Assembly: GCA_024679065.1 (NCBI GenBank)
Contig: JAGIQG010000009.1
Location: forward strand, 90,954,001 to 91,018,000
DNA from: Sphyrna mokarran
Taxonomy: Eukaryota
DNA length: 64,000 nt
Direction: 5' to 3'
The notes under the pieces were generated by a model. It was given only the letters and a program-made list of their open reading frames with translations, was not told the DNA's origin and did no database searches. Each line of letters begins with the position of its first letter. Position 1 is the stretch's first letter. This document shows positions 2,368 to 63,200 of the stretch, one piece after another. A program made the translations under genes and the position numbers.

Positions 2368-3693
2368 AAAATATGTAATATACCTGAAGAAAAATTACTT
2401 TTGGACTTTGAGAAGTCAATAATTTGAACAATATTTTGTAAAACTTGGAATCTCATCATTTGATGTCCTCTCCAGAATTTGTATGTAGTATTTGTTGTGG
2501 GTTTTTAGTTTTATCTGTTTCAATGGATGAGAAAAGGGAACTTTCATTGTTAACTCATTTTAAGTATATGTTATCACAATGATTGAACAACTCCAATGAA
2601 TCTTGTTCTGAACTATGTTTTTAACCCTGCTTGAGATATACCTGGTTAAAAGCAGCGAAAGTGAGGATGGGAATCTGTGGTTTGGGCTTCATTGACTGTT
2701 CTATTGGATCTCAGATTTAAAAGGAACCAAATAGTAACTGATAAATTTCAGCAGAAATGCAATAGGGCAAGAATCAAACAGGCTGCTGTGGGTGACCAAA
2801 GGGATAGTTATCTTAGCAGAATCTCAGAAGTCCAGATGTAGATAGAACTGAGGTAAAATAAATAAAGCTGGGACTTTCTGCTTCTTTCCTGTGACGCCTG
2901 TCATGGCAGTTATTAACATAAAATATTGCCAGAGTGCGAAATTCGGGTTTATGATGTTGTAAAACCAGTTTGCAATACTGCTGTCAAGCCTTCAAATGCT
3001 TTTCCCGCTGCCTAATGTCAGGCATGCCTTTTGCATACATTTCAACATCATGCATCATTAAAAAGGGTGCATGTCAGAATCATTCTTCCAACACTGGATC
3101 AGTAGGGCTTGTCAGTGTGCAATTGTGCTGTGTTTCATAGCGCTATATAAGCGATGTGCCCTTGGTGACATGCACTTTGCTCGACCCTTTGATATTCACG
3201 TACCTATTTTGCATCATACAATGTTTGTGGCAACTCATGTTCAACAGCACATCGCCTTCAGCAAGGGCTACCTCCAAAGCTGTACCTAATAGATCAGCAA
3301 TAAGATGGGGTTCATCTTGAGTAGGCTAACAGCAAGGCCCCTGACTGAAGAGTGGGATAAGTAGCCAAAGGCATGCCAAAGGGCTAAGGCCTGTACTAGA
3401 GTTGTGGGGGATGGGGGGTGGTGGGGGGGAGGAAGGGGAGGTCGTGCCTTATGAATCTGGTAGAATTTTTTGAGGAGGTGATGAAAATGGTGGACGAAGG
3501 GCACCATTGTCTATATGGATTTCAGTAAGGCGTTTGACAAAGTCCCTCATGGGAGGTTAGTTGAGACAGTCAAGGCTCATGGAATACAAGGACAGGTAGC
3601 TAGATGGATAAGTAACTGGCTTAGTAATAGGAACTCAGTAAGAATTTAGCAACACGAATTTATAATCCAACCAATTTATTTGATAGTAAAAAA

Positions 3694-3724
3694 GCGAGCT
3701 TTCGACTCTGTGTCTTCGTCAGGC
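3694..3724 (-). ncRNA. Minimal hammerhead ribozyme motif in PLE pLTR
   Basis: gc-CUGACGA-A-gac(acaga)guc-GAAA-GC-UC-gc; core intact, stem I only 2 bp. Confidence 0.75.
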
Positions 3725-3939
3725 AAATGCAGTGTTCTGGTCTGCAATAGCACACATCAGCACAGACAGTCAGAGATTGCTGATTAGAATGCGAATCCTT
3801 ACATCTAACCTGCTATTCAAGTGTTAAAGTGGCTAACAATGTGTGTGAAGGGAATCCTGAGCATTGTTAGAGAATTGTGTATTTTCTCCAGACAGCACAG
3901 TAAGTGAGGTTTTTTGCTAACCCAGGCAAGTTACGGGGG

Positions 3940-4946
3940 TTACAGATAGTGTGTCATGAAGCCAAGATCCCTGTTAAGACCGTCCTCATGTGTGCGGAGC
4001 TTGGCTATCAGTCTCTGCTCAGCGACTCTGCGCTGTCGTGTATCACGAAAGCCCCCTTGAAGAACATTTACCCGCAGGTCGGAGGCCGAATGCCCATGAC
4101 TGCTGAAGTGTTCGCCCACAGGAAGGGAACTGTTTTGCCTGGTGATTGTTGAGCGATGCTCATTCATCCGCTGTCGTAGTGTCTGCATGGTCTCCCCAAT
4201 ATACCATGCTTCGGGACATCCTTTCTTGCAACGTATTAGATAGACAACGTTGGCCGAGTTGCAAGAGTATGTACCGTGTACCTGGTGAATGGTATCCTCA
4301 CGTTTGATGACGTCGTCCATGTCTAGGATCCGGCATGTCTTGCAGAGGTTGCTGTGGCAGGGTTGTGTGGTATTGTGGTCACTGTTCTCCTGAAGGTTGG
4401 GTAGTTTGCTGCGAACAATGATCTGTTTGAGGTTGTGCGGTTGTCTGAAAGCAAGAAGTGGGGGGGTGGGGATGGCCCTAGCGAGATGTTCATCGTCATC
4501 AATGATATGTTGAAGACTCCGGAGAAGATGTCGTAGCTTCTCCGCTGCGGGGAAGTACTGGACAACAAAGGGTACTCTGTCCACCGTGTCCCGTGTTCGT
4601 CTTCTGAGGAGGTCAGTGCGGTTTATCGTTGTGGCACGTCGGAACTGTCGATCGATGAGTCGAGCGCCATATCCTGTTCTCACGAGGGCATCCTTCAGCG
4701 TCTGGAGGTGTCTGTCACGATCCTCCTCATCTGAGCAAATTCTGTGTATACAGAGGGCTTGTCCATAGGGAATGGCTTCATTAACATGTCTAGGGTGGAA
4801 GCTGGAGAAGTGGAGCATTGTGAGGTTGTCTGTCGGTTTGCGGTACAGTGAGGTGCTGAGGTGACCGTCCTTGATGGAGATGCGTGTGTCCAAGAATGCA
4901 ACTGATTCTGGAGAATAGTCCATGGTGAGTCTGATGGTGGGATGGA
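3940..4946 (-). pseudogene. PLE ORF 3' part: RT thumb, linker and GIY-YIG endonuclease (open frame, 5'-truncated)
   Basis: FLDT..LYRKPTD..SFHP, CxxxxCxxC linker, NVVYLIRC..C..YIGET..LRQRMNEH, and GLN terminus. Confidence 0.92.
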
Positions 4947-5386
4947 GAACAGTGACCACACAACCCTGCCACAGCAACCTCTGCAAGACATGTCGGATCA
5001 TAGACATGGACGACATCATCAAACGTAAGGATACCATTCACCAGGTACACGGTACATACACTTGCAACTCGGCCAACGTTGTCTACCTAATACGTTGCAA
5101 GAAAGGATGTCCCGAAGCATGGTATATTGGGGAGACCATGCAGACACTACGACAGCGGATGAATGAGCATCGCTCAACAATCACCAGGCAAAACAGTTCC
5201 CTTCCTGTGGGCGAACACTTCAGCAGTCATGGGCATTCGGCCTCCGACCTGCGGGTAAATGTTCTTCAAGGGGGCTTTCGTGATACACGACAGTGCAGAG
5301 TCGCTGAGCAGAGACTGATAGCCAAGCTCCGCACACATGAGGACGGTCTTAACAGGGATCTTGGCTTCATGTCACACTATCTGTAA
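4947..5386 (+). pseudogene. PLE GIY-YIG endonuclease, second (inverted) copy
   Basis: Near-identical translation to the C-terminal ~145 aa of the 3940 ORF. Confidence 0.92.
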
Positions 5387-5601
5387 CCCCCGTAACTTGC
5401 CTGGGTTAGCAAAAAACCTCACTTACTGTGCTGTCTGGAGAAAATACACAATTCTCCAACAATGCTCAGGATTCCCTTCACACACATTGTTCGCCACTTT
5501 AACACTTGAGTAGCAGGTTAGATGTAAGGATTCGCATTCTAATCAGCAATCTCTGACTGTCTGTGCTGATGTGTGCTATTGCAGACCAGAACACTGCATT
5601 T

Positions 5602-5632
5602 GCCTGACGAAGACACAGAGTTGAAAGCTCGC
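5602..5632 (+). ncRNA. Minimal hammerhead ribozyme motif in PLE pLTR
   Basis: gc-CUGACGA-A-gac(acaga)guu-GAAA-GC-UC-gc. Confidence 0.72.
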
Positions 5633-6816
5633 TTTTTTACTATCAAATAAATTGGTTGGATTATAAATTCGTGTTGCTAAATTCTTACTGAGTTCTTACC
5701 ACCCCAATCCAACGCCGGCATCTGTACATCATTAGTAATAGGAGACAGAGAGTAATAGTGGAAGGGTGTTTTTCTAGCTGGAGGTGGGTCACTAGTGGTG
5801 TGCAGCAGGGCTCGGTACAGGGACCTCTTCTATTTGTAATATATATAAATGACTTGGAAGAGGGAGTAAGTGGAGTGATCAGCAAGTTTGCAGACGATAC
5901 AAAGATGGCTGGACTAGTGGATAGTGAGGAGCATTGTCAGGCGATGCAGCAGGACATAGATAGGCTGGTAGCTTGGGCAGACAGATGGCAGATGGAATTC
6001 AATCCTGATAAATGTGAGGTGATGCATTTCGGGAGAAAGAATGTAGAGGGGAGGTATATGATAAAGGGTAGACCTATTAAGAGTATAGAAACGCAGAGGG
6101 ACCTGGGGGTGCAGATGCACAAGTCTCTGAAGGTGGCAGAGCAAGTGGAGAAGGTTGTGAAGAAAGCATATGGTATGCTAGCCTTTATAGGAAGGGGTAT
6201 AGAGTACAAGAGCTGGCCTTTAATGTTGCAGTTGTATAAAACGTTGGTTAGACCTCATTTGGAATACTGCGTCCAGTTCTGGTCGCCTTACTACCGGAAG
6301 GACGTGGAGACTCTGGAGAGAGTGCAGAGGAGGTTTACCAGGATGCTGTCTGGTATGGAAGGTCTGAGTTACGAGGAGAGGTTAGGCAAATTGGGACTGT
6401 TTTCCTTAGAAAGACGTAGACTTAGAGGAGATCTAATAGAGGTGTACAAGATTATGAGGGTATAGATAGAGTAAACAGGGTTAAGCTTTTTCCTAGGATG
6501 GACTCGAATAGCACGAGGGGTCACGGGCTTAGGGTGAGAGGGGTAAGGTATAATTTGGATGCTAGAGGGAGTTTTTTCACTCCCTCTAGCATCTAGCTAG
6601 AGGGTGGTGGGGATATGGAATGCGCTGCCAAATAAAGCGGTGGAGGCAGGTACTCTGGAGTTATTTAAATAATACTTAGATGGGCACATGAACAGAATGG
6701 GAATGGAGGGGTATAGGAAACTGATTTAAAATAGGGATCATGAGCCTTGGGAGTCCCTGGGAATGTGTAAATAGATGATGATATTTATGTACTTGTTTTT
6801 ATCCAACAGGTGCTTT

Positions 6817-6935
6817 GGTCCACCTTGTTGTCTAACAAGGGGCATAGACACGATGGGTCGTGAGAGGGCTGCTCTTGGATTTTTTTCAAGAGTATCCTAG
6901 TGCTTCACATCGTTAGTGTACGCTTGACCTGGACC
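6817..6935 (+). other. Conserved structured RNA domain in CR1 3' UTR (copy A1)
   Basis: Closing stem ggtcc/ggacc, hairpin ccttgtt/aacaagg, long stem ending in ctcttgga/ttcaagag; homologues at 27637, 32628, ~47015 and ~54128. Confidence 0.7.
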
Positions 6936-6942
6936 ATTTGAT

Positions 6943-7130
6943 GGGCAACACGACAGCTCAGTGATTATCGCTGTGCTGTGCAGATACATGGATTTGAGCC
7001 TGTGTATGTGGGAGTTTGCGCATTCTCCCTGTGCTTGCGTGGGTGTTCTCCGGATGCTCCGGTTTCCTCCCACATCCCAAAGGTGTGCTCTTAGGCTAAC
7101 CAGCAAAACAAATTCTCCCTAAATTGTCTC
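6943..7130 (+). mobile_element. Decayed tRNA-head + V-domain SINE sequence embedded in CR1 3' UTR
   Basis: gggcaacacgacagctcagtga aligns to a HE1-type head; ggagtttgcgcattctccc..gctccggtttcctcccaca is the V-SINE core. Confidence 0.8.
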
Positions 7131-8639
7131 AAATTTGGTTTTTAATCCATAGATCTATAAACATAGACAGGGATCACGGGTAGGGGTAGGAACATTGGGG
7201 TGGTGGTGCAGGCTCGTTGGGCCGAAGGGCCTGTTTCCCATGCTGTTTTGTTCTTTGTTCTTTGTTCTTTGAAGTAGGGTTTGCATACTTGACTAGGCTG
7301 GTGAGGGTGTGGATGTCTTCTATACTTGAATTTAATTGCATGGGACCTGAATGGGAAGGTGGCAAACTCAGGAAGGGTTTGACTTTATATTGTTCATCTT
7401 GCCAAGACTTCTCTTGTCCCAGTGCAGGGAGGGTGAGGATAATGGTGGTCCAGTCTCAGACCATTATCAACAGGCATGGACATGATGCCACTGCATCAGT
7501 CAGAGGTTTGTGGTGGGAGGAGGGGTGTATGATCATTTTCTTGGGCGACAGTTACCAAACTCAGCCCAGGGAGGAATCTACAACCCATAAGTAGGGAAAA
7601 GGTAGTATATGGGCAATAAGAGGTCTCATGATGGAAGTGGGAAGTTGTGGGGGAGAGGACAGTGGTGGTGTCCTCTCCCCCCACAATTTCCCACTCCCAC
7701 CATGTGAGTTGTGGTGTGAGGCTTTGTAAATCACGCTGTGCCAGAGGCCTCAAGATCGATGGGAGCAAGGTCCACAAGCACATCAAAAATCACAATAGGT
7801 CGAAGATTAGAATGAAAGAATTGAGGGAAACCTCAACATCATGCTGCATAGAGTCCTTGGGAGAGATATCTGCACTCTCAAGGGAGGGGCCAAGTAGGTC
7901 TGGCATTGAGGCCTCAACACCACCTTCTTATAAGATGAAGCAATTGAACAACAAGCAAAATAAATGAGGGCAAACTCAGCTGGTGAGTTCTCTGGGGGCC
8001 TCTTGAATGATTGGTGCAATTGCTACAGAGCCGAATAAAGGGCCAACAAATAGATACGTGTATTCTTGGATGAGAAAAGATTTGCAACTGAGTCAGATTA
8101 TGAGTTCTTCATTCAGAATGTAGAAAATCAGGAAGGCTACCACTGAAGAAACCTCATTATTAATGTGCATCTTTAATATTAGAGCAGTAATGGATTACTT
8201 TTGTCACAGCTTCCAAATTCCCCAGAGCAAGAAGAAAGTCAGGAGCAACTTGTGACAAGCCTCACATCATTCTGCTGGCAAGTTCACACAAGAAGGCTCA
8301 GCTCCTCCCCACCTGCAAACCGTTCTCCACTGATAATCTTGGTTCCTAACCAAACATGTTACACAAAGTGTTTACTCTCAACTAAATGGAAAGGTAAACT
8401 TGAAATGTGCCTGCACTGGATTTCAAGGCTGAATATTTGCTGACAGTAGTACTAAGCTCTTTAACCCAGTGAGTTAATAGTTGTCATTGGGAGAAATAGG
8501 ACCGTTAGAGATTCATGCTGACTCATGCTTTCTCATGTATGTTGCAGAGAGAAGACCACGACTAAGATGGATGTCTGTATAACTGCATGTAAGCAGGTCA
8601 GAGGCGCGGACGAGCACTCAACAACTCTGTGTGAACCAG

Positions 8640-10030: not shown

Positions 10031-10034
10031 CATG

Positions 10035-13710: not shown

Positions 13711-13914
13711 TAATCTGGACCATGCTTCAAATTCCTGGGATGCAGTCTTGCTTGTAAACTATGGGTGAGGTTCTTTCTTTTGATTCCCAATAAAGGGCCT
13801 GTAGTGATGAGAAGCTGGCTCTAGTTGAATTAGTACAGTGCCTTGCAAGACCCTTGCGGATACGTGAGAGTTAGTGTTGCCAACACTTTTCTGTGATCAT
13901 GAATCTAGTAGCTC

Positions 13915-14432
13915 ACATAGAACATGTAGAACATTGAACATTACAGCACAGTGCAGGCCCTTCAGCCCTCCAGTATTGTGCCAAGCTTTGCCTAATCCCT
14001 AGATCAAGCTATCCCCTCCCTATAATTCTGCTGTGCTCCATATGCCTATCCAATAACCGCTTAAAAGTTCTAACTGTGTCCAACTCCACTATCACAGCAG
14101 GCAGTCTCTTTCAACCCCAACCGCTCTCTGAGTGAAGAATCTATCTTGGATATCACTCCTATATCTCCCACCATGAACCTTATAGTTATGTCCCCCAGTA
14201 ACAACTACATCTACCACAGGAAATAGTCTCTGCATGTCCACTCTATCAATCCCTCTCATCATCTTATAAACCTCTATTAAGCCACCTTTCATCCTCCTCT
14301 GCTCCAAAGAGAAAAGCCATGATGTAGAGATGCCGGTGTTGGACTGGGGTAAACACAGTGTTGTCAGACTTCTTACTGTGTTTACCCCAAAGAGAAAAGC
14401 CCCAGATCCCTCAACCTTTCCTCATAAGACCA
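13915..14432 (-). mobile_element. CR1 3' fragment
   Basis: GLIEVYKMMRG..RFFTQR; tail (catagaa)n at ~13915. Confidence 0.9.
14319..14386. mobile_element. 68-bp palindromic mini-PLE insertion with 15-bp TSD
   Basis: TSD ccaaagagaaaagcc at 14304-14318 and 14387-14401; content matches the pLTR end at 5675-5732 in both orientations. Confidence 0.88.
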
Positions 14433-14434
14433 AT

Positions 14435-20245: not shown

Positions 20246-23005
20246 AACATAGAAACATAGAACAATACAGCACAAACAGGCCCTTCGGCCCACGAGTTGC
20301 GCCAATCACATCTACCAATCCACAGACCTATCTATAACGCCCTATCCCATTCGTTTCCATATACTCATCCAGAAGTTTTTTAAAAAACCCCAGCAAGTTT
20401 GCCTCAACAACCTCCGACGGCAGCTGATTCCATTCACTCACTACCCTCTGAGTGAAAAACTTACCCCTAACATCCCCTCTGTATTTGCTTCCCTGCACCT
20501 TAAATCTGTGTCCTCTCGTAGTGACCATTTCAGATCGGGGAAATAGTCTCTGAGAGTCCATCCTATCTATTCCTCTCAACATTTTATAAACCTCTATCAG
20601 GTCGCCTCTCAACCTACGTCTCTCCAGTGAGAAGAGTCCCAGCTCCCTCAACCTATCTTCATAAGGCCTGCCTCCCAATCCAGGCAGCATCCTTGTAAAT
20701 CTCCTCTGCACTCTCTCAATAGCCCCTACATCCTTCCTATAGTGAGGCGACCAGAACTGCTCACAATACTCCAAGTGGGGTCTGACAAGAGTCTTATAGA
20801 GCTGCATCATTACCTCCTGACTCCTAAACTCTATTCCTCAATTAATGAAGGCCAGTACACTCTACGCCTTCTGACCACTTCCTCCACCTGCGAGGCTGAT
20901 TTAAGAGTCCTATGGACCCGGACCCCGAGATCCTTCTGCTCTACAACAGAGCTAAGACTCCTACCCCTTATATTGTACTCCTTCATCCCATTATTCCTGC
21001 CAAAATGGACCACTACACATTTATCCGCGTTGAAGTCCATCTGCCACTTCTCCGCCCAGTCTTGCATCCTGTCTATGTCCCGCTGCAACTTTTGACATCC
21101 CTCCAGACCATCCACAACACCACCGACCTTTGTATCGTCGGCAAACTTACTAACCCATCCCTCCACTTCCTCATCCAGGTCATTTATGAAAATGACAAAC
21201 AGCAGGGGTCCCAGAACAGATCCCTGGGGCACTCCACTGGTTACCGACCTCCATGCAGAACAAGACCCATCCACAACCACTCTCTGCCTTCTGCTGGCAA
21301 GCCAGTTCTGGATCCACGAGGCCAAAGCCCCTTGGATCCCATGCCCTCTCACCTTCTCCAGAAGCCTTGCATGGGGGACCTTATCAAACACCTTACTAAA
21401 GTCCATGTACACTACGTCCACCGCTCTTCCTTTGTCAATGTGTTCAGTCACATTTTCAAAGAACTCAACTAGGCTCGTAAGGCATGACCTGCCCTTGACA
21501 AAACCATGCTGACTATTTCTAATCAGTCTAAACTTCTCCAAATGTTCATATATCTTATCCCTCAGAAGCCTCTCCATCAGCTTACCAACCACTGAAGTCA
21601 GACTCACCGGTCGGTAATTTCCTGGACTATCCCTGTTCCCTTTCTTAAAGATAGGAACCACATCCGCAATCCTCCAATCCTCCGGAACCTCTCCCGTTTC
21701 CATGGACGACGCAAAGATCATCGCCAGGGGCTCTGCAACCACTTCCCTCACCTCCCACAATAACCTGGGGTACATCCCATCCGGTCCCGGCAACTTGTCT
21801 ATCTTGATAGAATTTAACAGGTCTAACACATCCTCTTTCCTAACATCCACATACTCAATCTTTTCCGTTTGCCTCAAACCTGCAGTACAACCTCCCAGTT
21901 CACTTTCCACCGTGAATACCGAGGCAAAGTACTCGTTAAGCACCTCTGCCATTTCTTCCAGATTCACACAGACTTTCCCCCCTTCACCTTTTATGGGTCC
22001 TATCCCTTCTCTTCTCATCCTTTTACTTTTCACATATTTGTAGAAGGCCTTGGGATTCTCCTTAATGTTACCTGCCAAGGCCTTCTTATGACCCCTTCTG
22101 GCTCTCCTAATTTCCTTTTTAAGCTCCCTTCTACACACCTTATACTCCTCTAGATCACTAACATCTCCTAGCTCTCTGAACCTTTTATACACCTTTCTTT
22201 TCTTCCTAACTAGGTTCACCACAACCTTCGTGCACTACAGTTCCCGCGTCTTACCAAAACCTCCTTGTCTCCTCGGAACGTTGTCTTGCAGAGCCCCAGA
22301 CAAACATTCCTTGAATATCCGCCACTTTCCTTCTGTACTCTTCCCCAAGAACACCTCCTTCCAGTTTATACGTCCAATTACCTGCCTAATGTTTTCATAT
22401 TTCCCCTTACTCCAGACAAACACCTTCCTACCCTGCCTGATCCTATCTCTTTCCATTGCTATCATGAAAGAGATAGAATTATGATCTCCTTTCCCAAGAT
22501 GCTCTCCTACCGTGAGATCCGACACCTGTCCTGGCTCATTAGCCAGCACCAGGTCAAGTACAGCCTCTCCTCTTGTAGGCTTTTCCACGTACTGTGTCAG
22601 GAAACCTTCCTGAACACACCTAACAAACTCCTTGCCATCCAAACCCCTTCCCTTTGGGATATTCCAGTCGATGTTTGGGAAATTGAAATCTCCCATCACG
22701 ACAAACTTGTTATTTCTACATCTGTCTAGGATCTGATTCCCTATCTGCACCTCAACTTCCCTGTCGCTATTGGGCGGCCTATAGAATACACCCAGCAAAG
22801 TTATCGACCTTTTGCTGTTCCTAACTTCCACCCACAGGGACTCCGTAGACAATCCATCCACGTCTTCCACCTTCTTTGCAGCCATGACACTGTCCCTGAT
22901 CAACAGTGCCACACGACTTCCTCTTTTGCCCCCAACCTGTCCCTCCTGAAGCATCTGAATCCCGGCACCTGAAGTACCCAGTCCTGTCCCTGAGACAACC
23001 AAGTC
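20246..23005 (-). mobile_element. CR1 LINE, near-complete ORF2 (APE endonuclease + RT), one stop and one frameshift
   Basis: ORFs 22235-23002 (YRPP, GDFNFP, LDL, GDH), 20831-22222 (YRPVSLTS, FADD) and 20328-20810. Confidence 0.97.
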
Positions 23006-28109: not shown

Positions 28110-28785
28110 AAAAGTGGAGTAGACTGTGTATGGAACCAAAAGAAATGGGCTTTTTGCGTCTGTATTCACAGGAAACGGGCATGGAGTCTATGGAAATAGG
28201 GCAAACAGGTAGGGAGGTCATGGAACCTTTACAGATTAAAGAGGAGGAGGTACTGGCTATCTTGAGGCAAATAAGAGTGGATAAATCCCCAGAACCAGAC
28301 AGGGTATTCCTACAATCCTTGAGGGAGGCTAGTGTTGAACTTGCAAGGACCGTGGCAGACATATTTAAAATGTCAATATTCACGGGCGAGGTGCTGGATG
28401 ATTGGAGGGTGGCTCATGTTGTTCCATTGCTTAAAAAAGGTTCTAAAAGAAATCCGGGGAATTCTAGGCCAGTAAGTTTGACGTTGGTGGGCAAGTTATT
28501 GGAAGGTGTGATAAAAGATAGCTTCTACAAATATTTGGATAGACAGGGACTTATTAGGGAGAGCCAACAAGGCTTTCTGCGTGGTGGGTCATGTTTGACC
28601 AATCTATTAGAGTTTTCAAGGAAGTTACCAGGAATGTGGATGAAGGGAAGGCGGTGGATGTTGTCCACTTGGATTTCAGCAAGGCCTTTGACAAAGTCCC
28701 TCATGGGAGGTTAGTTAGGAAGGTTGAGTCGCTAGGTATACATGAGGAGGTTGTAAATTGGATTAGACACTGGCTTAAAGGAAGA
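28110..28785 (+). mobile_element. CR1 RT N-terminal fragment ending at a PLE junction
   Basis: DKSPEPD, DWRVAHVVPL, DFSKAFDKVPH, WIRHWLKGR. Confidence 0.92.
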
Positions 28786-28844
28786 ACTTAGTAAGAATCT
28801 AGCAACACCAATTTTAAATCCAACCGATTTATTTGATAGTAAAA

Positions 28845-28880
28845 TTGCGAGCTTTCGATCTTTTCATCTTCGTCAGGCAA
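28845..28880 (-). ncRNA. Minimal hammerhead ribozyme motif (best-preserved copy)
   Basis: uugc-CUGACGA-A-gau(gaaaag)auc-GAAA-GC-UC-gcaa. Confidence 0.82.
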
Positions 28881-30311
28881 ATGCAGTGTTCTGGTTTGCA
28901 ATAGCACACATCAGCACAGACAGTCACAGATTGCTGATTAGAATGCGAATCCTTACATCTAACCTGCTATTCAAGTGTTAAAGTGGCTAACAATGTGTGT
29001 GAAGGGAATCCTGAGCATTGGTTAGAGAATTGTGTATTTTCTCCAGACAGCACAGTAAGTGAGGTTTTTTGCTAACCCAGGCAAGTTACGGGGGTTACAG
29101 ATAGTGTGGCATGAAGCCAAGATCCCTGTTAAGACCATCCTCATGTGTGTGGAACTTGGCTATCAGTCTCTGCTCAGCGACTCTGCGCTGTCATGTGTCA
29201 TGAAGGCCCCCTTGAAGAATATTTACCCGAAGATCGGAGGCCGAATGCCCGTGACTGCTGAAGTGTTCGCCCACAGGAAGGGAACTGTTTTGCCTGGTGA
29301 TTGTTGAGCGATGCTCATTCATCCGCTGTCGTAGTGTCTGCATGGTCTCCCCAATGTACCATGCTTCGGGACATCCTTTCTTGCAACGTATTAGGTAGAC
29401 AACGTTGGCCGGGTTGCAAGAGTATGTACTGTGTACCTGGTGAATGGTATCCTCAAGTTTGATGATGTCATCCATGTCTATGATCTGGCATGTCTTGCAG
29501 AGGCTGCTGTGGCATGGTTATGTGGTATTGTAGTCACCGTTCTCCTGAAGGTTGGATAGTTTGCTGCGAACAATGATCTGTTTGAGGTTGTGCGGTTGTC
29601 TGAAAGCATGGGGACCAAATTTCATGTTCATGGAAGTGAGATGTTCATCGTCATCAATGATATGTTGAAGACGCCGGAGAAGATGTCGTAGCTTCTCCGC
29701 TCCAGGGAAGTACTGGACAACAAAGGGTACTCTGTCCACCGTGTCCCGTGTTTGTCTTCTGAGGAGGTCAGTGCGGTTTATCGCTGTGGCACGTCGGAAC
29801 TGTCAATCGATGAGTCAAGTGCCATATCCTGTTCTCACGAGGGCATCTTTCAGCGTCTGGAGGTGTCTGTCATGATCCTCCTCATCTAAGCAAATTCTGT
29901 GTATATGGAGGGCTTGTCCATAGGGAATGGCTTCTTTAACGTGTCTAGGGTGGAAGCTGGAGAAATGGAGCATTGTGAGGTTGTCTGTCAGTTTTCGGTA
30001 CAGTGAGGTGCTGAGGTGACCGTCCTTGATGGAGATGCATGTGTGCAAGAATGCAACTGATTCTGGAGAATAGTCCATGGTGAGTCTGATGGTGGGATGG
30101 AACTTGTTGATATCATCATACAGTTGTTTCAATGATTGTTCACCATGAATCCAAAGGAAAAAGATGTCATCAATGTATCTAGTATATAACCTTGGTTGAA
30201 GATCCTGTGTGGTGAAGAAGTCTTGTTCGAACCTGCGCATGAAGATGTTGGCATTTCGAGGTGCGAATTTGGTCCCCATGGCTGTTCTGTGTGTCTGGAA
30301 CAGAACACTGC

Positions 30312-30351
30312 ATTTGCCTGACGAAGACGAAAAGATCAAAAGCTCGCAAAT
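30312..30351 (+). ncRNA. Hammerhead motif with 6-bp stem I and a mutated core
   Basis: auuugc-CUGACGA..(A)AAA-GC-UC-gcaaau. Confidence 0.68.
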
Positions 30352-32344
30352 TTACCTTCAAATAAATCGGTTGGATTTAAAATTGGTTTTGCTAGATTCT
30401 TACTGAGTTCTTACTACCCCAGTCCAACGCCGGCATCTCTACATCATGACTACTATCGACACCGCATACTGCCGGATCCAAGTGGAGAGGATCTCCAAGA
30501 GGATTGCACAAATCGACCCAGACATCAAGTTTCTACAGAGATGCAAGAAAGCAGACAGGATACCAAAGGGACTACAGATCACGAACCCACTCAGGTCAAC
30601 CTATAACACAGACTACACTGAGAGACTTTGCCGTCGCACCTCTCTCACACTCCTCAATCACCTCATACACCAGCTCTATAGCAAACGCCGCACCCTGGAA
30701 AGTAAAATGGAATACATATTCTCAACTTGCGCTCAGGACGCAGACCAGCTGCGAAACTTTGCCAAGCATATAAGATGAAGAAACTACACTATTTACATGC
30801 ACACCAAGAACAGGAAACTTGAAAAACTCGGCATCACCACCAGCAACAACCAAGGCACCACAGTACCTTGGCACCACAGTAGAAAACAGCACTACCGCAG
30901 GGAGGTCCATTGTTAACTTGTCGGACTACACATTTCAATCAGAGAAATCGAAGTTCTCAGCTGAGGGCTCAATTTCTGTCCTACCACCAAAATGGACCCC
31001 ATCAGTCTCGCAGCGGACACAGAGGAATTCATCAGGCAAATGAGACTATGTGAGTTCTTCCACAAACCCCAAGAGGCCAATAGTGAACTCAATGAGACAG
31101 CTAATGAACCAGAACAGCCGACAGAGGGATCCGCAGTGCAGCAACCGAAGAGGAATGAATCCAATTGGACTCCTCCGGAAGGCCGCTGCCCCTGACTGGA
31201 CATGTATGCCCAAGCCATCAGGAGGTGCGTGAACACCAGATTCATCAACCATACTTACAAGACAGTCCTGAACATCACCCAAGTCAAAGCAAGGCCATCC
31301 GTGCTCTCAAGACCAACTGCAATATTGTCATCAAACCAGCAGACAAAGGAGGCGCCACCGTCATACTGAACAGAATGGATTACTGTGAAGAAGTGTACCG
31401 ACAACTAAACAATGTGAAACACTACAGACAGTTACCAGCAGATCCGACCAAAGAACACACTCGTCAACTCAACACTCTGATCAAAACTTTGATCCGGACC
31501 TTCAGAACACCCTCCAGGCCCTCATTCCACGTACTCCCTGCATTGGAGATCTCTACTGCCTCCCAAAGATACACAAGGCAAACATACCCGGCCGTCCTAA
31601 AGTATCGGGCAATGGGACCCTGTGTGAGAACCTCTCCGGCTATATCGAGGGCATCCTGAAACCAATTGTACAAAGAACCCCCAGCTTTTGTCTTGACATT
31701 ACAGACTTCTTACAGAAACTCAGCACACATGGAGCATTTGAACCAGGGACACTCCTTGTCACAATGGATGTCTCGGCACTCTACACCAACATCCCCCACG
31801 ACGATGATATTGCTGCAACTGCCTCAGTACTCAATGCCAACAACTGCCAGTTTCCGGATGCAATTTTACAACTCATCCGCTTCATCTTGGACCACAATGA
31901 CTTCACCTTCAACAATCAGCTTTTCATCCAGACACACGGAACAGTGTTCCTTTTTGCTTTTTCTGCCCCCTTCATCCTGTGTGAATTAGTCACTCTACTA
32001 CAGAAAAAGGAGCTGGCTGTTTGGTGAATATCTGATAAATAGTTAAATTCTGTTTCAATCCTAAGGTCTAAAATGATGTAAACTAAGGTAGTAAAATATA
32101 TAAAAAGGAAGGTAAATAAATATAAGTAATTAATTAAAACACACTAAGAATGGCAGAACAGGTAATATATCAAGGCCACAACATGTACGAGCTCCTGGAT
32201 GCCAGTGTGATCAAGAGCAAACACATGTCTACAGTAAGTGTTTGCAGTTCAAGGAGCTTTGGATCAGTCATTGGAGGCTGATCTGCAGACATGATGACAC
32301 AACAAGGAAGGGAAAAGTACCTGGAAGCTCTGTACTAAGAGACA

Positions 32345-39310: not shown

Positions 39311-40885
39311 TAGAACATAGAACATAGAACATAGACCATTACAGCACAGAACAGGCCCTTCGGCCTTCGATGTTGTGCCGACCAAAATAAAAAGCAATGC
39401 CCCTCCAAAACTAAACCATTCCCTTCTCTTCCATATACTTATCAATTAACCTCTTAAACGCCACCAAACTTGGCGCATCTACAACAGCTGCAGGCAGGGC
39501 ATTCCACTCCCTAATCACTCTTTCAGTAAAGAACCTACCTCTGATATCCGCCCTATAACTCATACCCCTTAATTTAAAGCTGTGTCCCCTCGTGCTAGCT
39601 TTCTCCATACTAGGAAAAAGGCTATCACTGTCCACCCTATCTAAACCTCTAATCATCTTATATGCTTCAATAAGATCCCCTCTTAGCCGCCTCCTTTCTA
39701 ACGAAAACAACCTCAAATCCTTCAACCTCTCTGCATAGGACCTGCCCTCCATACCAGGCAACATCCTGGTAAACCTCCTCTGTACCCTCTCCAATGCCTC
39801 CACATCTTTCTTATAATGTGGCGACCAGAACTGCACACAATACTCCAAGTGCGGCCGCACTAGCGTTTTGTACAGTTGCAACATGATGCTGCGGCTCCTA
39901 AATTCAATCCCCCTACCAATAAAAGCTAAGACTCCATATGCCTTCTTAACAACTTATCCACTTGACTGCCTACTTTCAGGGATCTATTGACACATACACC
40001 AAGATCCTTCTGTTCCTCAACACTACTAAGAGCCCTACTATTAGCCCTATACTCTACAAATTTATTGTTCCTGCCAAAGTGCATTACCTCACACTTTTCC
40101 ACATTAAACTCCATTTGCCACCTCTCGGCCCAGCTCTGCACTTGTCCAAGTCACTCTGTAAACTAAAACACCCCTCTTCACTATCTACCACACCACCAAC
40201 TTTAGTATCATCTGCAAATTTACTGATCCATCCCTCAATACCCTCATCCAGATCATTTATAAAAAATTACAAACAGCAGGGGCCCCAAAACAGACCCCTG
40301 AGGCACACCACTCGTCACCGAACTCCAGGATGAATATCTCCCATCAACCACCACCCTCTGTCTTCTATCTGCCAGCCAATTCCTAATCCAATTAGCTAAA
40401 TCACTCTCTATTCCACACATCTGCATTTTCTGTAGAAGTCTTCCATGGGCCACCTTATCAAACGCCGTACTAAAGTCCATATATACTACATCAACCGCCT
40501 TACCCCCATCCACCTCTCTGGTCACTTTCTCAAAAAACTCAATGAGGTTAGTAAGGCATGACCTACCCTTCACGAAACCATGCTGAATGTCCCCAATCAA
40601 TTCATTTCTTTCTAAATAACTATAAATCCTATCCCTAATAATTCTCTCCAATACCTTGCCCACAACAGAAGTAAGACTCACTGGCCTATAATTCCCTGGA
40701 AGGTCTCTCTTCCCCTTCTTAAACAATGGGACCACATTCGCTATCCTCAAGTCCTCCGGAACCACACCCGTAACCAACGAGGACCTGAAGATCAGAGCCA
40801 GAGGCTCTGCAATCTCCTCTCTTGCCTCCCAGAGAATCCTAGGGTAAATCCCGTCCGGCCCAGGGGACTTATCCAACTTCAAACC
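39311..40885 (-). mobile_element. CR1 RT fragment inserted in the array
   Basis: ORFs 40253-40897, 39926-40141 and 39411-39884; (tagaaca)n tail. Confidence 0.96.
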
Positions 40886-52396: not shown

Positions 52397-52953
52397 GGAT
52401 ATCTTGAGGCATGGTACATTGACAAACCATGCAGATGCTACGACGATCGATGAATGGACACCGCTTGGCAATCACCAGGTAGGAGTGTTCCCTTCCTGTC
52501 AGGGAACACGTTAGCAGTCACGGGCATTTAGCCTCTGATCTTCGGTTAAAGCCTTCAGCACACCAACAATGCAGAATTGCCAAGCAGAAACTGATACCCA
52601 AGTTCTGCACATATGAGGATGGCCTCAACTGGGATCTTGGGTTCATGTCACATTATCTGTAACCCCCATGATTTGCCTGGGCTTGCAAACTCTCACTAAC
52701 TGTCCTGGCCTCAGATAACTCATACCTTTTTAACCTGTGCTTAACTCTCTCTCCACTCGCATTGTCTGCAATTGTAAAGACTTGATTACTTGTTCAGACT
52801 CACATTCCAACCACTAATTTGTAATTGAGTTTGTGTCTATATATGACTTGTTTATGAAACAAATCATTCACTCATCTGATGAAGGAACAGTGCTCCGAAA
52901 GCTCATGCTACTGAATAAACCTATTGGACTTTAACCTGTGAGACTCTACTATG
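52397..52953 (+). mobile_element. PLE 3' fragment (GIY-YIG + pLTR)
   Basis: EAWYI..MNGHR..EDGLNWDLGFMSHYL*, then pLTR. Confidence 0.88.
52873..52907 (+). ncRNA. Minimal hammerhead motif
   Basis: cau-CUGAUGA-A-gga(acagugc)ucc-GAAA-GC-UC-aug. Confidence 0.75.
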
Positions 52954-52959
52954 CAATAA

Positions 52960-53230
52960 GGAGAGATAATATCTTAGAGGGGGCATCAAATGATGCTTCA
53001 TAGTTAGAGCTTAGGAATAAAAAAAAAAGGGGCAGGCATGCTTCTAGGTGTTTATTATAGATTCCTAGATAATCAGCAGAAAATTGAGGAGCCAGTATGT
53101 GCACAGTTCAGGAAGGTGTGTAAAAACAATAATATAGGGTAATTATATTAGGTCATTTCGACTTTCTCAACATGAATTGGGACAGATATTCTGTTAAGAA
53201 CTTGGATGGAGCAGATTTCTTAATGTGTAC
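52960..53230 (+). mobile_element. CR1 APE endonuclease fragment
   Basis: ELRNKK..LLGVYYRF..IILGHFDF, decayed. Confidence 0.65.
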
Positions 53231-53766
53231 AGGTGTATTGTTTAGATCCTAAATAGCTACCCCTTATTCTGCGATGAATCCTTTGGTTCTAGACATCCCC
53301 GGCAGGGGAAGCATTCTTCCTACATCTATTGCCACTCAGTTCAAGGGCAATTAAGGGTGAGCAATAAATGCTGGCCTTTGAATCCATTGAACGAATAAAA
53401 AAAATACTCTGTTGAAAAGCTGTAAGAAGGTAAAGTCACCACAGTGCCAGATGACCCAGGCTGCTCTCCCCTTTGAAGGGCAGAACTGGGTGATGAAGAT
53501 TCTAAACTGAGGTTCACCTCATATCAGGAGTCAGAAGGTTGAGAAGACAGGGTCTTCATGAATAATCTCATGTTGTAACCAAATGTTGTATATTTCAATG
53601 AGATAACTCATTCTTCAATTCTAGAGAATGCAATCCCAGTCTACTCAATTTATTTTAAAATGTTGTTATTCATGGATATGTAACATTAGGATATTACGAC
53701 CACTGTTCCTTAAGTGATCCCTAACTACACTTTACTATTTGAAAAACCTTGTATCTATGAATATTA

Positions 53767-53880
53767 ATGATGTGGTGATGTCAGCATTGGATTTGGGGGG
53801 CACAGTAAGAAGTCTCACAACATCAGGTTAAAGTCCAAGTTAAAGTTGGATTTTAACCTGATGTTGTGGACTTCTTACTA
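53767..53880. mobile_element. ~110-bp palindromic mini-PLE insertion
   Basis: agtaagaagtc..caacatcaggttaaa is inverted with tttaacctgatgttgtggacttcttact; probable TSD ctatgaaYatt at 53755 and 53878. Confidence 0.82.
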
Positions 53881-54115
53881 TGAACATTTAGATACCAAAT
53901 GGGTCTTTTTTTTTGAGCCAGGTCTCTGTTATCAACTTCACATCCCTTTGGAGTACAGAAAAGCCCCTCGACCCTGTCAAATCAGAGGAAGCCCCATGCC
54001 ACCCTCTTAGAGGAAAGCATCCATCCCAAAAACATTGGTTTTTGTATTGATGGCTTTTTGATGTAGAGAAATTTATATAATTAACAAAAATTCTTTCCTC
54101 TGCCCTTAATATCCT

Positions 54116-59200: not shown

Positions 59201-59914
59201 TGCAAACCTCCCATCTGTCCAAATAAGTGACTGAGTGTGGAAGGATTGTGATGTGGCGCATGCCTGAGAGACTGATGAAAATCATTCCATCATTCTCGCT
59301 GTTATGGGACTTACAATCTTTTTGGGAGCACTTCTCTCCAAGATTTCAAGTTTCTATACAAAAATAAACTTTATCGTATGTAAAATAAATAAATAAAGTA
59401 TTATCTTAACACTAAAATTTATAACTATTTAATTCAACTTTGTTTCTATGTTCTATGTTTTCTATGCTTGTACTCTGCACTACCATACATGCCTCCCTTT
59501 GCAAGCTGTCTTGTATTACAGGAATTTTGAAGGTTCATTCATTTCTTTCAGGACAACCCTAAGGCATGACACAGTTCTCTGGAATTTACTTTAATTCTCC
59601 TCAATATTTCAGCTTTTACAAGGCACATTATTTATGGAGATCTTTTTATTGGCTTTTGGTTAAAAGACTGGCCAATCTTCTCTAAAAACGTAAAATACCT
59701 CATGACAGTGGACTGTTCAGTTCTTTGTCCTAACTGCTGGCAGATATATATCTGCCTTGTATCTAACAGCGTCCCAAATGCAAATTACTGCAAAGACCTC
59801 TGAAGATTTCTTTCTCTTATTATGATTTTTTCAGTTTCTTTCATCATATGAATTCCAAGTTCAGCTTGAGCCTCCAAAGCATTCCCATGGTGAGCAATAA
59901 AGTTGAAATTTGGC

Positions 59915-60290
59915 TGCTATCCAGGCAGGTGGGGAATATTCCATCACATTCCTGACGTACATTTTGTAGACGGTGGATAGACTCTGGGGAGTCAGGGATG
60001 AGTTACTCACTACAGTATATCTAGCCTCTGACCTGCTCTTGTAGTTTGTGGTGCATCGGGTTGAGTTTCTGGTCAATGGTAACTCCAATGATGTTGACAG
60101 TAGCGGAATTCAGTGATGGTTACACCATTGAGTATTAAGGGATGGTGATTAGAATATCTCTTATTAGTGATGGTCATTGCCTGGAGTTTGTGTGGAGCGA
60201 ATGTTACTTGCCTCTTGTCAACCCAAGCCTGGATATTGTCCAGATTTTGTTGCATAAGAATATGGACTGCTTCAGTACTGAGGAGCCACT
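59915..60290 (-). mobile_element. Second-lineage CR1/L2-group LINE, piece 1
   Basis: MQQNLDNIQAW..VTFAPHK and VRNVMEYSP; continues at 63338. Confidence 0.85.
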
Positions 60291-63200
60291 CAGGAGGGTA
60301 TAAACTAGTTTGGCAGGGGAGTTGGGATCCAAAGCAGTAGGGAGACAGAAGAGAAATTTGAGGACAGCACAGAAGTTAAGGAAAGCACATTAATTAGTAA
60401 AGGCAGTGTCAGTAATCCTAGTACCAGGCAGATCAGACAGAAGCAAGACAGAGAGCAAGGGAAGTCCAGATTAAACTGCACTTATTTCAATGCAAGTGAC
60501 ATGATGGGCAAGGCAGATGAACTCAGGGCACTGATAGGTACATGGGACTGGGATATTATAACCATGACTGAAAAATGGCTAAGTGAGGGACAGTTTAATG
60601 TTCCAGGGTACAGATGCAATAGGAAAGCTAGAACAGGATGTAAGAGAGGAGGGGAATTGCACTTTTGATTAGGGAAAACATCACGGTCATACTGAGAGGG
60701 GATATATCTGAGGGTTCAGCCATTCAGTCAAATGGAGAGAATTAAGAAATAAGAAGGGGAAAATCACTTTGATAGAATTGTATATAGGCCCCCAAATAGT
60801 CAGCGGGAAATTATGGAGCAAATATGTAAGGAGATTACAGATAGCGCCAAGAAAAATAGGGTGATAATAGTCAGAGATTTTAATTTTCCCAACATTAACT
60901 GAGACAGCCATAGTACTAGAGGGTTGGATGGAGAGAAATTTATTGAGTGTATTCAGAAGGAATTTCTCATTTAATATGTGGATGGCATGACTAGAGACGG
61001 GGCAAAATTTGACCTCCTCTTGGGAAATAAGGAAGAGCAGGTGACAGAAGTGTTAGTGAGGGATCACTTTGGGACCAGTGACCATAATTCTACTCGTTTT
61101 AAGATAGCTATGAGAATGATAGGTCTGTCCGAAAACTTAAAATTCTAAATTGGGTCAAGGCCAATTTTGATGGTATCAGGCAGGAAGTTCCAAAGGTTAA
61201 TTGAGGAGTCTGTGGAAAGGCAAAGGGACCTTTGGTAAGTGGCATGCTTTCAAAAGTATATTAATCAGGGCTCAGGATAAACACATTCCTCTTGGAGTCA
61301 AGGGCAAGGCTGGCAGAAATAGGGAACCCCTGGATGACTCGGGATATTAAGGCCCTGGTCAAGAAGAAGAGGCACATGATGTGCATAGGCCGCTGAGATC
61401 AAGTGAATCTCTTGGAGAGTATGGGGGTGTAGGGGTAGAGTTAAGAGAGAAATCAGGAGGCAAAAAGGGGACACAAAATTGTTTTGGCAGATAAGGCATA
61501 GGAGAATCCAAAGAGCTTTTACAAATACATAAAGGGCAAAAGAGTAACAAAGGAGAGAGAAGGGCCTCTTAAGGATCAACAAAGTCATCTATGTGCAGAT
61601 CCATAAGAGATAGATGTAATCCTAAATGAATACTTCTCATCAGTATTTCCTGTTGAGGAAAGTATGGATGTTAGGGAACTTGGGGAAATAAATAGTGATG
61701 TCTTGGGAGTGTACATATTACAGAGAAGGAGATCTGGAAGTCTTAAAACGCATCAAGATAGAAAAATATGTGGGACCTGATGAGATATATCCCAGGACTT
61801 TGTGGGAAGCTAGGGAGGAAATTGCGGATTCTCTATCTGAGATATTTGAATCATCAATAGAGATGGGTGAGGTGTCTGAATACTGGAGAGTGGCAAATGT
61901 TGTGCCTTAGTGTAAAAAGGGCTGCAGGGAAAAGCCTGGGAACTACAAGCCAGTGAATCTCTCATCTGTGGTGGGTAAATTATTGGAAAGTATTTTGAGA
62001 GACAGGATCTACAGGCATTTAGAGATGCAAGGACTGATTAGGGACAGTCAGCATGGCTTTGTGAGTGGAAAATCATGTCTCACAAATTTGATTGAGTTTT
62101 TTGAAGGGGTAACCAAGAAGGTAGATGAAGGCAGTGCAGTTGATGTTGTCTATGTGTACTTTAGCAAGGCCTTTGACAAGGTACTGCATGGTAGGTTGTT
62201 GCATAAAGTTAAATCTCACAGGATCCAGTGTGAGGTATCTAAATGGATACAAAATTGGCTATAAATTGGTGTTGCCAACTTCTTAACAGAAGCCAGAGTG
62301 TGGTTGTAGAGAGTTGTTTTTTTAAAACTGGAGGCCTGTGACCAGCGGTGTACCTCAGAGATCAGTGCTGTGCCCACTGTTACTTGTCATTTATATTAAT
62401 GATTTGGATGAGAATATGGGGGGCATGGTTAGTAAGTTTTCAGATGACACCAAGATTGGTGGCATAGTGAACAGTGAAGAAAGTTATCTCCAATTGCAAT
62501 CTTGATCAATTGGGCCAGTGGGCTGACAAATAGCAGATGGAGTTTAATTTAGACAAATGTGAGGTGATGTACTTTGGTAGACTGAACCAGGGCAGGACTT
62601 ATTCCGTTAATATAGGGCATTGGGGAGAGCTACAGAACAAAGTGATTTAGGGGTACATGTTCATAGCTCCTTGAGAGTGGAGTCACAGCTAGACAGAGTG
62701 GTGAAGAAGGCACTTGGCATGCTTGATTTCATTGGTTAGAACATTGAATACAGGAGTTGGAACATCTTGTTAAAGTTGTACAAGACATTGGTAAGACCAC
62801 ATGTGTGCAATTCTGGTCACCCTATCACAGAAAGGATATTTTTAAACTAGAAAGAGTGCAGAAAAGATTTGCTAGGATGCTACCGGGACTTGATGGATTG
62901 AGTTATAAGGAGAGGCTGAATAGATTGGGACATTTTTTTCTCTGGAATATAGGAGGCTGAGGGGTGACTTTATAGAGGTCTACAAAATATTGAGGGGCAT
63001 AGACAAGGTGGATAGTCAATATCTTTTCCCAAAGTAGAGGAGTCTAAAACTAGAGGGCATAAGTTTAAGGTGAGAGGAGAGAGATACAAGAATGTCCAGA
63101 GAGGCAATTTTTTCACACAGTGTCTGGAACAAGCTGCCAGAGGTAGTAGAGGCAAGTACAATTTTATCTTTTAAAAAGCATTTAGATAGTTATATGGGTA

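What the first reader, a model, noticed from the sequence alone, without database searches (positions are those of the whole stretch)
3616..62290. Three PLE insertions hit the same W-L-x-x-R codons of CR1 ORF2
Seen: TGGCTTAGTAATAGG|PLE (3616-3632), TGGCTTAAAGGAAG|PLE (28771-28785) and TGGCT|26-nt pLTR piece|ACAGA (62256-62290). The three hosts are different CR1 subfamilies, so these are not one duplicated event. Of seven CR1 copies spanning this site, the others (~1320 TAGCTTT, ~21300 TGGCTTG, ~40375 TGGCTGG, ~49145 decayed) are empty. The 14319 mini-insert also sits at GGCTT in a CR1. The 53767 insert does not. Inference: the GIY-YIG endonuclease prefers GGCTT(A)-like sites, making this PLE a parasite of the dominant LINE.
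Basis: partly seen in the sequence, partly recalled or inferred. Interest (0 to 1): 0.82.

Follow-up and report, generated by a model that had tools for sequence, protein, structure and literature searches.

The report
Penelope retroelement repeatedly hits one CR1 site
In this shark DNA, a Penelope-like retroelement has inserted independently, within the same few bases, into the reverse-transcriptase gene of three different CR1 LINE copies, which suggests that its endonuclease has a preferred target inside the genome's commonest repeat.

Summary
Two Penelope-like element (PLE) insertions start after TGGCTTAGTAATAGG (PLE from 3632) and TGGCTTAAAGGAAG (PLE from 28785). These are the same bond, within 1 nt, of the W-L-x-x-R codons of two CR1 ORF2 copies. 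The first has a perfect 11-bp target duplication. A third CR1 (62261-62285) carries a 25-nt piece matching the PLE 3' end at 22 of 25 positions, in the same interval.

The hosts are only 67-70% alike while the PLE arms are 92-94% alike, so these are separate events. Random placement gives a same-site pair in 0.6% of trials and a triple in 0.02%. Contigs of a public run of the same species add two more junction types at this site.

The inverted, one-tailed build matches published PLE biochemistry: both strands cut, two RT start sites. Only the target is new, and four literature searches found no PLE aimed at a LINE gene.

- A hot spot is likely.
- The GGCTT(A) motif is not established.
- Five of eight PLE events in the window lie elsewhere, so "parasite of the LINE" overstates it.

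The parts
3433..3631 (+). CR1 host 1, ORF2 5' part, ending in W-L-S-N-R (TGGCTTAGTAATAGG at 3617-3631). The left TSD copy is 3621-3631.
   Evidence: tblastn to a window CR1 ORF2, aa 243-311; sequence; TSD coordinates.
3632..4943 (-). PLE insertion 1, antisense arm. It holds an intact 365-aa ORF (RT C-terminus, CX4CxxC linker, GIY-YIG). Its outer end is the 'no-tail' terminus.
   Evidence: Self-BLAST; Pfam GIY-YIG; translation.
4944..5731 (+). PLE insertion 1, sense arm (4944-5694, 97.2% identical to the mirror part of the antisense arm) plus the 37-nt tail (5695-5731).
5732..7271 (+). Right TSD copy (5732-5742), then CR1 host 1 continues (R-R-Q-R-V...) to its 3' end.
   Evidence: 257-aa open frame 5692-6462.
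28121..28784 (+). CR1 host 2, ORF2 5' part, ending in W-L-K-G-R (TGGCTTAAAGGAAG at 28771-28784).
28785..30298 (-). PLE insertion 2, antisense 5'-truncated arm starting at the same 'no-tail' terminus as in insertion 1.
30298..31944 (+). PLE insertion 2, sense part: 112 nt of pLTR end, the 37-nt tail (30410-30446), the ORF start (ATG at 30446) and about 1.5 kb of decayed ORF. It breaks off at 31944 into unrelated DNA, so neither the right junction nor the rest of CR1 host 2 is present.
61454..62260 (+). CR1 host 3 (c6), ORF2 5' part, ending in W-L (TGGCT at 62256-62260).
62261..62287 (+). A 20-27-nt sense-oriented fragment of the PLE 3' end, taken from 7-31 nt inside the no-tail terminus. It replaces 4-7 nt of the CR1 between TGGC(T) and (AAC)AGA.
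   Evidence: 22 of 25 matches to the ins1 arms; 0 of 300 shuffles reached 20; alignment; codon alignment.
62288..63016 (+). CR1 host 3 continues (R-S-Q-S-V-V-V...).
1320..1334 (+). Empty W-L-x-x-R site of CR1 copy c1 (TAGCTTTCC...).
21290..21304 (-). Empty W-L-x-x-R site of CR1 copy c3 (TGGCTTGCC...).
40364..40378 (-). Empty W-L-x-x-R site of CR1 copy c5 (TGGCTGGCA...).
14319..14388 (-). Mini palindromic PLE insert (tail plus short fold-back) with a 13-15-bp TSD, in the G-L-F-S-L-E codons of an antisense CR1 ORF2 C-terminus. This is a different CR1 site that also begins with GGCTT.
53768..53882 (-). Mini palindromic PLE insert with a TSD of about 13 bp (2 mismatches), not in a CR1.

Best explanation
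A Neptune-type Penelope-like element of this shark integrates by cutting both target strands about 11 nt apart. It primes reverse transcription from each 3' end, at one of two fixed start sites in its RNA that lie 37 nt apart. This gives inverted arms, one with a 'tail', and a TSD.

Its endonuclease module (a GIY-YIG domain plus a conserved CX4CxxC linker) has a sequence preference that is met by the W-L-x-x-R codons of CR1 ORF2. The bottom strand is cut after TGGC and the top strand after the first R codon. Different CR1 lineages are therefore hit again and again at the same bonds.

Shown here: the anatomy, the identical break points, the independence of the events and their improbability by chance.

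Inferred: that the protein's sequence recognition is the cause, and what exactly is recognised.

The site is a preferred target, not an exclusive one.
For: - Same bonds. Insertions 1 and 2 begin after the first R codon, within 1 nt of each other. The insertion 1 TSD places the other cut after TGGC. The third insert starts after TGGC(T).
- Independence. Hosts are 67-70% identical and PLE arms 92-94%.
- Chance. 0.56% for a pair and 0.02% for a triple.
- CTGGCTTA occurs twice in the window and both sites are occupied.
- Contigs of run X1. Among the 15 joints shown of 744, two join a PLE sense arm without a tail to the CR1 at C|TTGGTAATAGG (5689->5735 and 5697->5735). These differ from insertion 1, which has the tail there and reads CTTAGT.
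- GIY-YIG domain. The three linker cysteines are invariant in 11 of 11 aligned PLE proteins.
- Literature. The PAc PLE cuts and extends both strands from two internal RT start sites, and the tail is the stretch between them (PMC11167929, abstract, passages and main-text section 3, part 1 of 2). The CX2-5CxxC linker has been proposed to mediate target bias in Neptune PLEs (PMC8557442, passages).
Against: - The sample is one 64-kb window plus a truncated contig table, with no genome-wide denominator.
- 5 of 8 PLE-end loci in the window are elsewhere.
- 3 of 6 CR1 copies spanning the site are empty. 4 of 6 TGGCTTA sites are empty.
- One shown contig joint puts the PLE end about 60 nt further down the CR1 (5803->3631).
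- The contig joints have short sides (20-25 nt). The table favours forms nearly colinear with the reference.
- The second independent GGCTT site (14319) is out of register and not significantly similar.
- The right junction of insertion 2 is missing.
- The homology map used for the chance test misses the most diverged CR1 pairs, so those probabilities are somewhat too low.
Confidence: 0.6

Rival explanations
1. The endonuclease has only a loose, short preference for AT-rich or TTA/ATT-like sequence. Because CR1 is so abundant, many 'warm' spots recur, and the W-L site is just the one that happened to show up in this window.
For: PAc prefers AT-rich DNA and an ATT motif (PMC11167929, main-text section 3, part 1 of 2). 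The TSDs here are AT-rich and three start with TTA. PLE ends also lie at other CR1 places: 14319 in the C-terminus, the 52397-52950 copy next to a CR1-like endonuclease region, and joint 5803->3631.
Against: 135 of 920 11-mers of host 1's CR1 coding part are at least as AT-rich as the TSD. CTTA occurs 409 times in the window. A short motif would therefore scatter the hits, not place three within 15 nt and two on the same bond.
Confidence: 0.25
2. Pure coincidence: random insertions into a genome that is about one quarter CR1.
For: CR1-like sequence makes up roughly a quarter of the window.
Against: A simulation that allows any homologous positions of any repeat in the window gives 0.56% for a pair within 2 nt and 0.02% for a triple within 8 nt. 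Further junction types at the same bond appear in contigs.
Confidence: 0.05
3. A single ancestral insertion was later copied, by segmental duplication, retrotransposition of a CR1 that already carried the PLE, or gene conversion between CR1 copies.
For: The two large inserts have the same orientation and the same no-tail terminus. One contig joint has a k-mer depth of 395 against about 13-16 for single-copy contigs, so some junctions are multi-copy.
Against: The hosts differ right up to the junction (AGTAATAGG against AAAGGAAG) and are 67-70% identical, while the PLE arms are 92-94% identical. The inner structures differ: arm lengths are 1312+751 nt in insertion 1 and 1514 nt plus pLTR-ORF in insertion 2. 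The third insert has a different build and orientation rule.
Confidence: 0.04
4. The site is broken for reasons unrelated to the PLE's sequence recognition, and the PLE merely uses the break. Candidates are a DNA hairpin, a fragile site, or resemblance to the PLE's own pLTR/tail target.
For: Penelope EN was reported to recognise its own tail-containing fragment (PMC11167929 passage citing Pyatkov 2004).
Against: The occupied hosts have no stable fold at the site (z = +0.96 and -0.50). The target flanks score no better against the PLE's own sequence than shuffles do (19-20 against a null median of 19-21).
Confidence: 0.04

Closest known systems
Poseidon PLE of Anolis carolinensis (PAc), in vitro integration (Frangieh et al. 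2024, PMC11167929)
   Same: Both target strands are cut and extended. There are two adjacent internal RT start sites, and a 30-40-nt tail lies between them. The ORF has RT followed by a C-terminal GIY-YIG domain, and the pLTR-ORF layout is the same.
   Different: [quoted passage not shown] Here the recurrent target is a specific place in another retrotransposon's reading frame.
Neptune, Naiad and Chlamys PLEs with microsatellite insertion bias (Craig et al. 2021, PMC8557442)
   Same: These are PLEs with a target bias. A CX2-5CxxC zinc-finger-like linker upstream of GIY-YIG has been proposed as the determinant, and the shark element has CX4CxxC in that position.
   Different: Their targets are simple repeats ((TA)n, (CA)n, (C)n), and TSDs are often not discernible. 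Here the target is a unique-sequence coding site with clean 11-15-bp TSDs.
Target-specific non-LTR retrotransposons (R2 in 28S rDNA; Tx1 and R1 clades; Utopia in U2 genes; PMC4640811). From memory: Tx1L inserting into the Tx1D transposon.
   Same: Repeated integration at one defined nucleotide position of a multicopy sequence, which is read as a low-cost niche.
   Different: Those elements use RLE or APE endonucleases and nearly all copies sit in the target. Here the enzyme is GIY-YIG and only 3 of 8 window events are at the site.
L1 twin priming (recalled, not looked up)
   Same: Inverted, 5'-truncated arms arise by priming on both target strands.
   Different: In L1 the second priming is internal and sporadic. 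In this PLE both primings start at fixed sites and this is the normal mode.

Membership tests
Canonical EN+ Penelope-like element | A single ORF with RT followed by a C-terminal GIY-YIG endonuclease | tested here: met
   Pfam GIY-YIG in both arms. Shark homologues carry RVT_1 plus PLE-specific Pfam families. The RT region is seen in translation.
Canonical EN+ Penelope-like element | pLTR architecture with an adjacent inverted 5'-truncated copy | tested here: met
   Insertion 1 has inverted arms that are 97.2% alike. Insertion 2 has an inverted arm followed by pLTR end, tail and ORF.
Canonical EN+ Penelope-like element | A 30-40-nt tail at only one end of the insertion | tested here: met
   The 37-nt tail is at 5695-5731 and is absent from the left end at 3632. 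The same holds for the minis at 14319 and 53768.
Canonical EN+ Penelope-like element | Hammerhead ribozyme in the pLTR | tested here: inconclusive
   Rfam gave no hammerhead match at gathering score on the whole window, nor at E<=10 on two pLTRs. CTGATGA...GAAA-like cores are visible by eye at about 52877 and about 5605. Motif recognition is from memory.
Neptune/Nematis-type PLE | CX2-5CxxC zinc-finger-like motif upstream of GIY-YIG | tested here: met
   C-HSNL-C-KT-C. The three cysteines are invariant in 11 of 11 aligned proteins. Clade placement by phylogeny was not done.
Site-specific retroelement (R2/Tx1-like sense) | Most copies occupy one defined target | tested here: not met
   3 of 8 PLE-end loci in the window are at the W-L site and 5 are elsewhere.
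Site-specific retroelement (R2/Tx1-like sense) | Independent copies share the junction nucleotide | tested here: met
   Insertions 1 and 2 agree within 1 nt. The third agrees within 1 nt at the other cut. Contig joints agree at the same bond.
CR1 LINE (host) | APE-type endonuclease plus RT in ORF2 | tested here: met
   Exo_endo_phos(_2) and RVT_1.
CR1 LINE (host) | Placement in the CR1 clade rather than L2, Rex or others | not tested
No phylogeny or reference comparison was made.

The most novel reading that the evidence does not exclude
This shark PLE lineage may have evolved true sequence-directed integration into a conserved stretch of the CR1 reverse-transcriptase gene. Its CX4CxxC-GIY-YIG module would read an extended site spanning both cuts (about 15-25 bp around TGGC|TT...R|AGNCAGAG). 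That would make it the first GIY-YIG retroelement that lives mainly inside another retrotransposon, disabling CR1 copies as it spreads. It would also be a natural two-strand-nicking, RNA-templated inserter with a definable target.
Probability: 0.3. Interest if true: 0.75.

Novelty: new variant of a known kind. Interest (0 to 1): 0.55.

Why it matters
What PLE endonucleases recognise is largely open. Published data give only AT-rich or ATT, microsatellite or self-sequence preferences.

A defined hot spot in an abundant LINE gene would provide a natural substrate, with both nick positions known, for the in vitro system that already exists. It would allow the CX2-5CxxC linker hypothesis to be tested. 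It would also be an example of one retrotransposon class using another as a landing pad.

For genome annotation, it would explain why many shark CR1 copies are split at the same codon.

Tried and rejected
1. Harvesting more shark loci through PLE protein homologues.

2. Scans of viral, metagenome and prokaryote genome collections with the PLE tail pattern. The first two scans gave 0 hits. The looser pattern gave 120+120 stretches. These are chance matches of at most 25 nt with no PLE around them, so they were discarded.

3. A protein search with the 74-aa frame that reads from the CR1 flank into the antisense arm, to collect junction peptides. It returned 1 candidate and 0 hits.

4. Earlier notes of the scan gave titles only and no usable flanks.

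5. Read laying gave qualitative joints, but 729 of 744 joints and 7137 loose ends were not shown. No count of occupied against empty sites was possible.

6. Self-target mimicry was rejected.

7. A hairpin at the site was rejected.

8. AT-richness alone was rejected.

9. A bipartite motif shared by the W-L site and the 14319 site (GGCTT ... GGAG.CAGAG) looked attractive. It is not above background in a general alignment test: 8,918 of 42,642 windows score as well. It is kept only as a hypothesis.

10. Rfam found no hammerhead.

11. Supplements of PMC11167929 (Figs S1-S2, cleavage and genomic-end data) and of PMC8557442 were not opened. They may hold target-site data that bear on the motif question.
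Full report
WHAT IS THERE. The window is shark DNA. Earlier notes on this genome describe NAR-TCR loci, and the closest PLE proteins come from Mustelus, Scyliorhinus and other sharks. It is rich in CR1-like LINEs, with Exo_endo_phos plus RVT_1 domains, and in Penelope-like elements.

The PLE encodes an RT C-terminus, an invariant CX4CxxC linker and a GIY-YIG domain. It has a 3' UTR/pLTR of about 310 nt and two alternative outer ends. One is a 'no-tail' end (...CTTACTGAGTT). The other lies 37 nt further on (...TACATCA), directly before the ORF's ATG.

Insertion 1 spans 3632-5731. It consists of an antisense arm without a tail (3632-4943) joined head-to-head to a sense arm with a tail (4944-5731). 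The arms are 97.2% identical over 763 nt. The insertion is flanked by a perfect 11-bp TSD at 3621-3631 and 5732-5742.

Insertion 2 spans 28785-31944. It has an antisense arm, then 112 nt of pLTR end, the tail and about 1.5 kb of decayed ORF. It breaks off into unrelated DNA, so its right junction is lost.

Two mini inserts, at 14319-14388 and 53768-53882, follow the same rule with TSDs of 13-15 bp.

A sensitive scan with nine terminal probes found PLE ends at 8 loci only.

OBSERVATION. The six CR1 copies that reach the site were aligned on TGGATnnnnnnnTGGCT.
- Host 1 reads TGG CTT AGT AAT AGG | PLE.
- Host 2 reads TGG CTT AAA GGA AG(A) | PLE.
- The top-strand break is therefore the same bond, within 1 nt.
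- The TSD of insertion 1 puts the other break after TGGC.

In the third CR1 the frame runs ...TGG CT, then 27 extra or replaced letters, then AGA AGC CAG AGT. Only 7 nt are expected in that gap.
- The 25-mer 62261-62285 matches the ins1 arms at 22 of 25 positions, at 7-31 nt from the no-tail end.
- The next best matches are the two insertion-2 arms and the 53767 mini.
- 0 of 300 shuffles reached 20 matches.

I read this third insert as a sense-oriented PLE 3' fragment of 20-27 nt that replaces 4-7 nt. Its left edge falls on TGGC(T). Its right edge lies 3-6 nt before the top-strand break of insertion 1. Up to 5 letters at that edge could belong to either partner. It lies inside the same 15-nt interval, but it is a deletion-type event, not a TSD-type event.

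INDEPENDENCE. Over the 190 nt upstream of the site, the three hosts are 67-70% identical to one another. They differ in the two codons that abut the junction. The PLE arms of insertions 1 and 2 are 92-94% identical. The inner builds also differ. Duplication, retrotransposition of a composite element or gene conversion cannot explain the three window events.

CHANCE. I placed 8 events at random on the 55,174 non-PLE positions. A coincidence was counted for any two positions aligned to each other in a self-BLAST of the window (554 directed HSPs).
- A pair within 2 nt arose in 0.56% of 20,000 trials.
- A triple within 8 nt arose in 0.02% of trials.
- The map misses the most diverged CR1 pairs, so the true values are somewhat higher, but not by orders of magnitude.

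BEYOND THE WINDOW. All runs that hold the stretch are kept as contigs. I laid window:1100-6500 on four of them at 80% likeness.
- The empty form of host 1's site is abundant in X1. Joints that skip 2111-2112 nt appear in 23 contigs, and 59 contigs run on past 3632 with uninterrupted CR1 sequence.
- One 542-nt contig of X4 shows the empty form with 12 mismatches.
- Among the 15 joints shown of 744, two join a PLE sense arm without a tail to the CR1 at C|TTGGTAATAGG. These are 5689->5735 (depth 395) and 5697->5735 (depth 97.7).
- Both differ from insertion 1 in configuration (no tail on that side) and in the host (CTTGG, not CTTAG). They are therefore further events at the same bottom-strand bond.
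- Their short sides are only 20-25 nt.
- One other shown joint (5803->3631) puts a no-tail end about 60 nt further down the CR1.
- Most rows were not shown, so no frequency can be given.
- The table also shows many symmetric fold-back joints (for example 3690->5636 in 9 contigs), so mini palindromic inserts are common genome-wide.

THE MOTIF.
- CTGGCTTA occurs twice in the window and both sites are occupied. TGGCTTA occurs 6 times with 4 sites empty. GGCTT occurs 97 times.
- The three W-L events are one homologous site and count once for motif inference.
- The only independent case is the 14319 mini. It sits in CR1's G-L-F-S-L-E codons in the same orientation relative to the CR1. Its TSD starts with GGCTT and is followed by GGAGCAGAG, against GGAGACAGAG at the W-L site.
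- The GGCTT there is 3 nt out of register with the cut. In a general local-alignment test, 8,918 of 42,642 window segments resemble the W-L site at least as well.
- The 53767 target has no such motif.
- AT-richness does not single out the site: 135 of 920 11-mers are as AT-rich.
- There is no fold at the occupied sites.
- There is no resemblance to the PLE's own sequence.
- What is recognised therefore stays open. It must be more than 4-5 nt to give this recurrence.

MECHANISM AND LITERATURE. The double-ended, one-tailed build is what Frangieh et al. 2024 found in vitro for the Anolis PLE. [quoted passage not shown]

Craig et al. 2021 describe inverted 5'-truncated copies, the one-sided tail, microsatellite bias, and the CX2-5CxxC linker as a candidate determinant of target bias (PMC8557442, passages).

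Target-specific retroelements reported so far are mostly non-LTR elements of the early-branched, Tx1 and R1 groups (PMC4640811, passages).

Four full-text searches listed no paper describing a PLE aimed at a LINE coding sequence. I saw listings only for these, apart from the papers named above.

VERDICT. The anatomy is already known. The recurrent, bond-precise use of the CR1 W-L-x-x-R codons is real in this window, is unlikely by chance and is echoed in contigs. I take it as a preferred target of this PLE's endonuclease (confidence 0.6). Two things remain unproven: that GGCTT(A) is the determinant, and that the element is mainly a parasite of CR1.

The read laying tables were truncated. The collection scans returned only chance hits. 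Paper supplements were not opened.

Noticed in passing
window 30298-31944: The sense half of PLE insertion 2 stops abruptly at 31944, inside the RT region, and runs into unrelated unique DNA. The rest of the PLE and the 3' part of its CR1 host are missing, which points to a later deletion or rearrangement.
   Followed up: partly
window 11387-11460: The 3' end of the second-family PLE (antisense, about 11395-13703, about 77% like insertion 2) is followed by a 15-nt inverted copy of its own sub-terminal sequence. This is a snap-back with the 3' ends facing inward, unlike the other inserts.
   Followed up: no
window 13780-13890: There may be the 3' end of a third PLE family here, in sense orientation. 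It has a GTGATGAG-like core and ends in a sequence that resembles the other families' sub-terminal GTGTTG...CTTACTGTG end. It abuts the 5'-truncated end of the 11395-13703 copy.
   Followed up: no
window 52397-52965: A 5'-truncated second-family PLE copy has a clear CTGATGA...GAAA core. Its right flank (52951-53300) matches a CR1-like endonuclease domain (E = 3e-7). A candidate TSD (ATATCTT.GAGG) lies 15 nt beyond the apparent end.
   Followed up: partly
window 3632-5731, as seen in run X1: Many contigs join the two arms at mirror positions about 59 nt and about 108-113 nt from the ends (3690->5636; 3739/3741/3744->5584-5587). Perfect mini palindromes with preferred fold-back points are therefore common in the genome.
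   Followed up: no
window 3509-3623 and 5735-6114, as seen in run X4: A 542-nt contig of another coded organism carries the empty form of host 1's site with only 12 mismatches. A 1321-nt contig matches the antisense arm at about 98%. Whether this is an orthologous empty site or a shared young repeat could not be told.
   Followed up: no
window about 35000-47000: A long stretch is made of diverged internal repeats (66-76% alike, many overlapping ORFs of 150-370 aa) and is GC- and CA/TG-rich. It begins right after a CR1 fragment that is cut about 36 nt before the W-L site (34756-34908). Its nature was not examined.
   Followed up: no
window 5692-6462: The PLE tail is open in the CR1 frame. A 257-aa frame runs from 13 tail-encoded residues straight into the CR1 ORF2 C-terminal half.
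   Followed up: no
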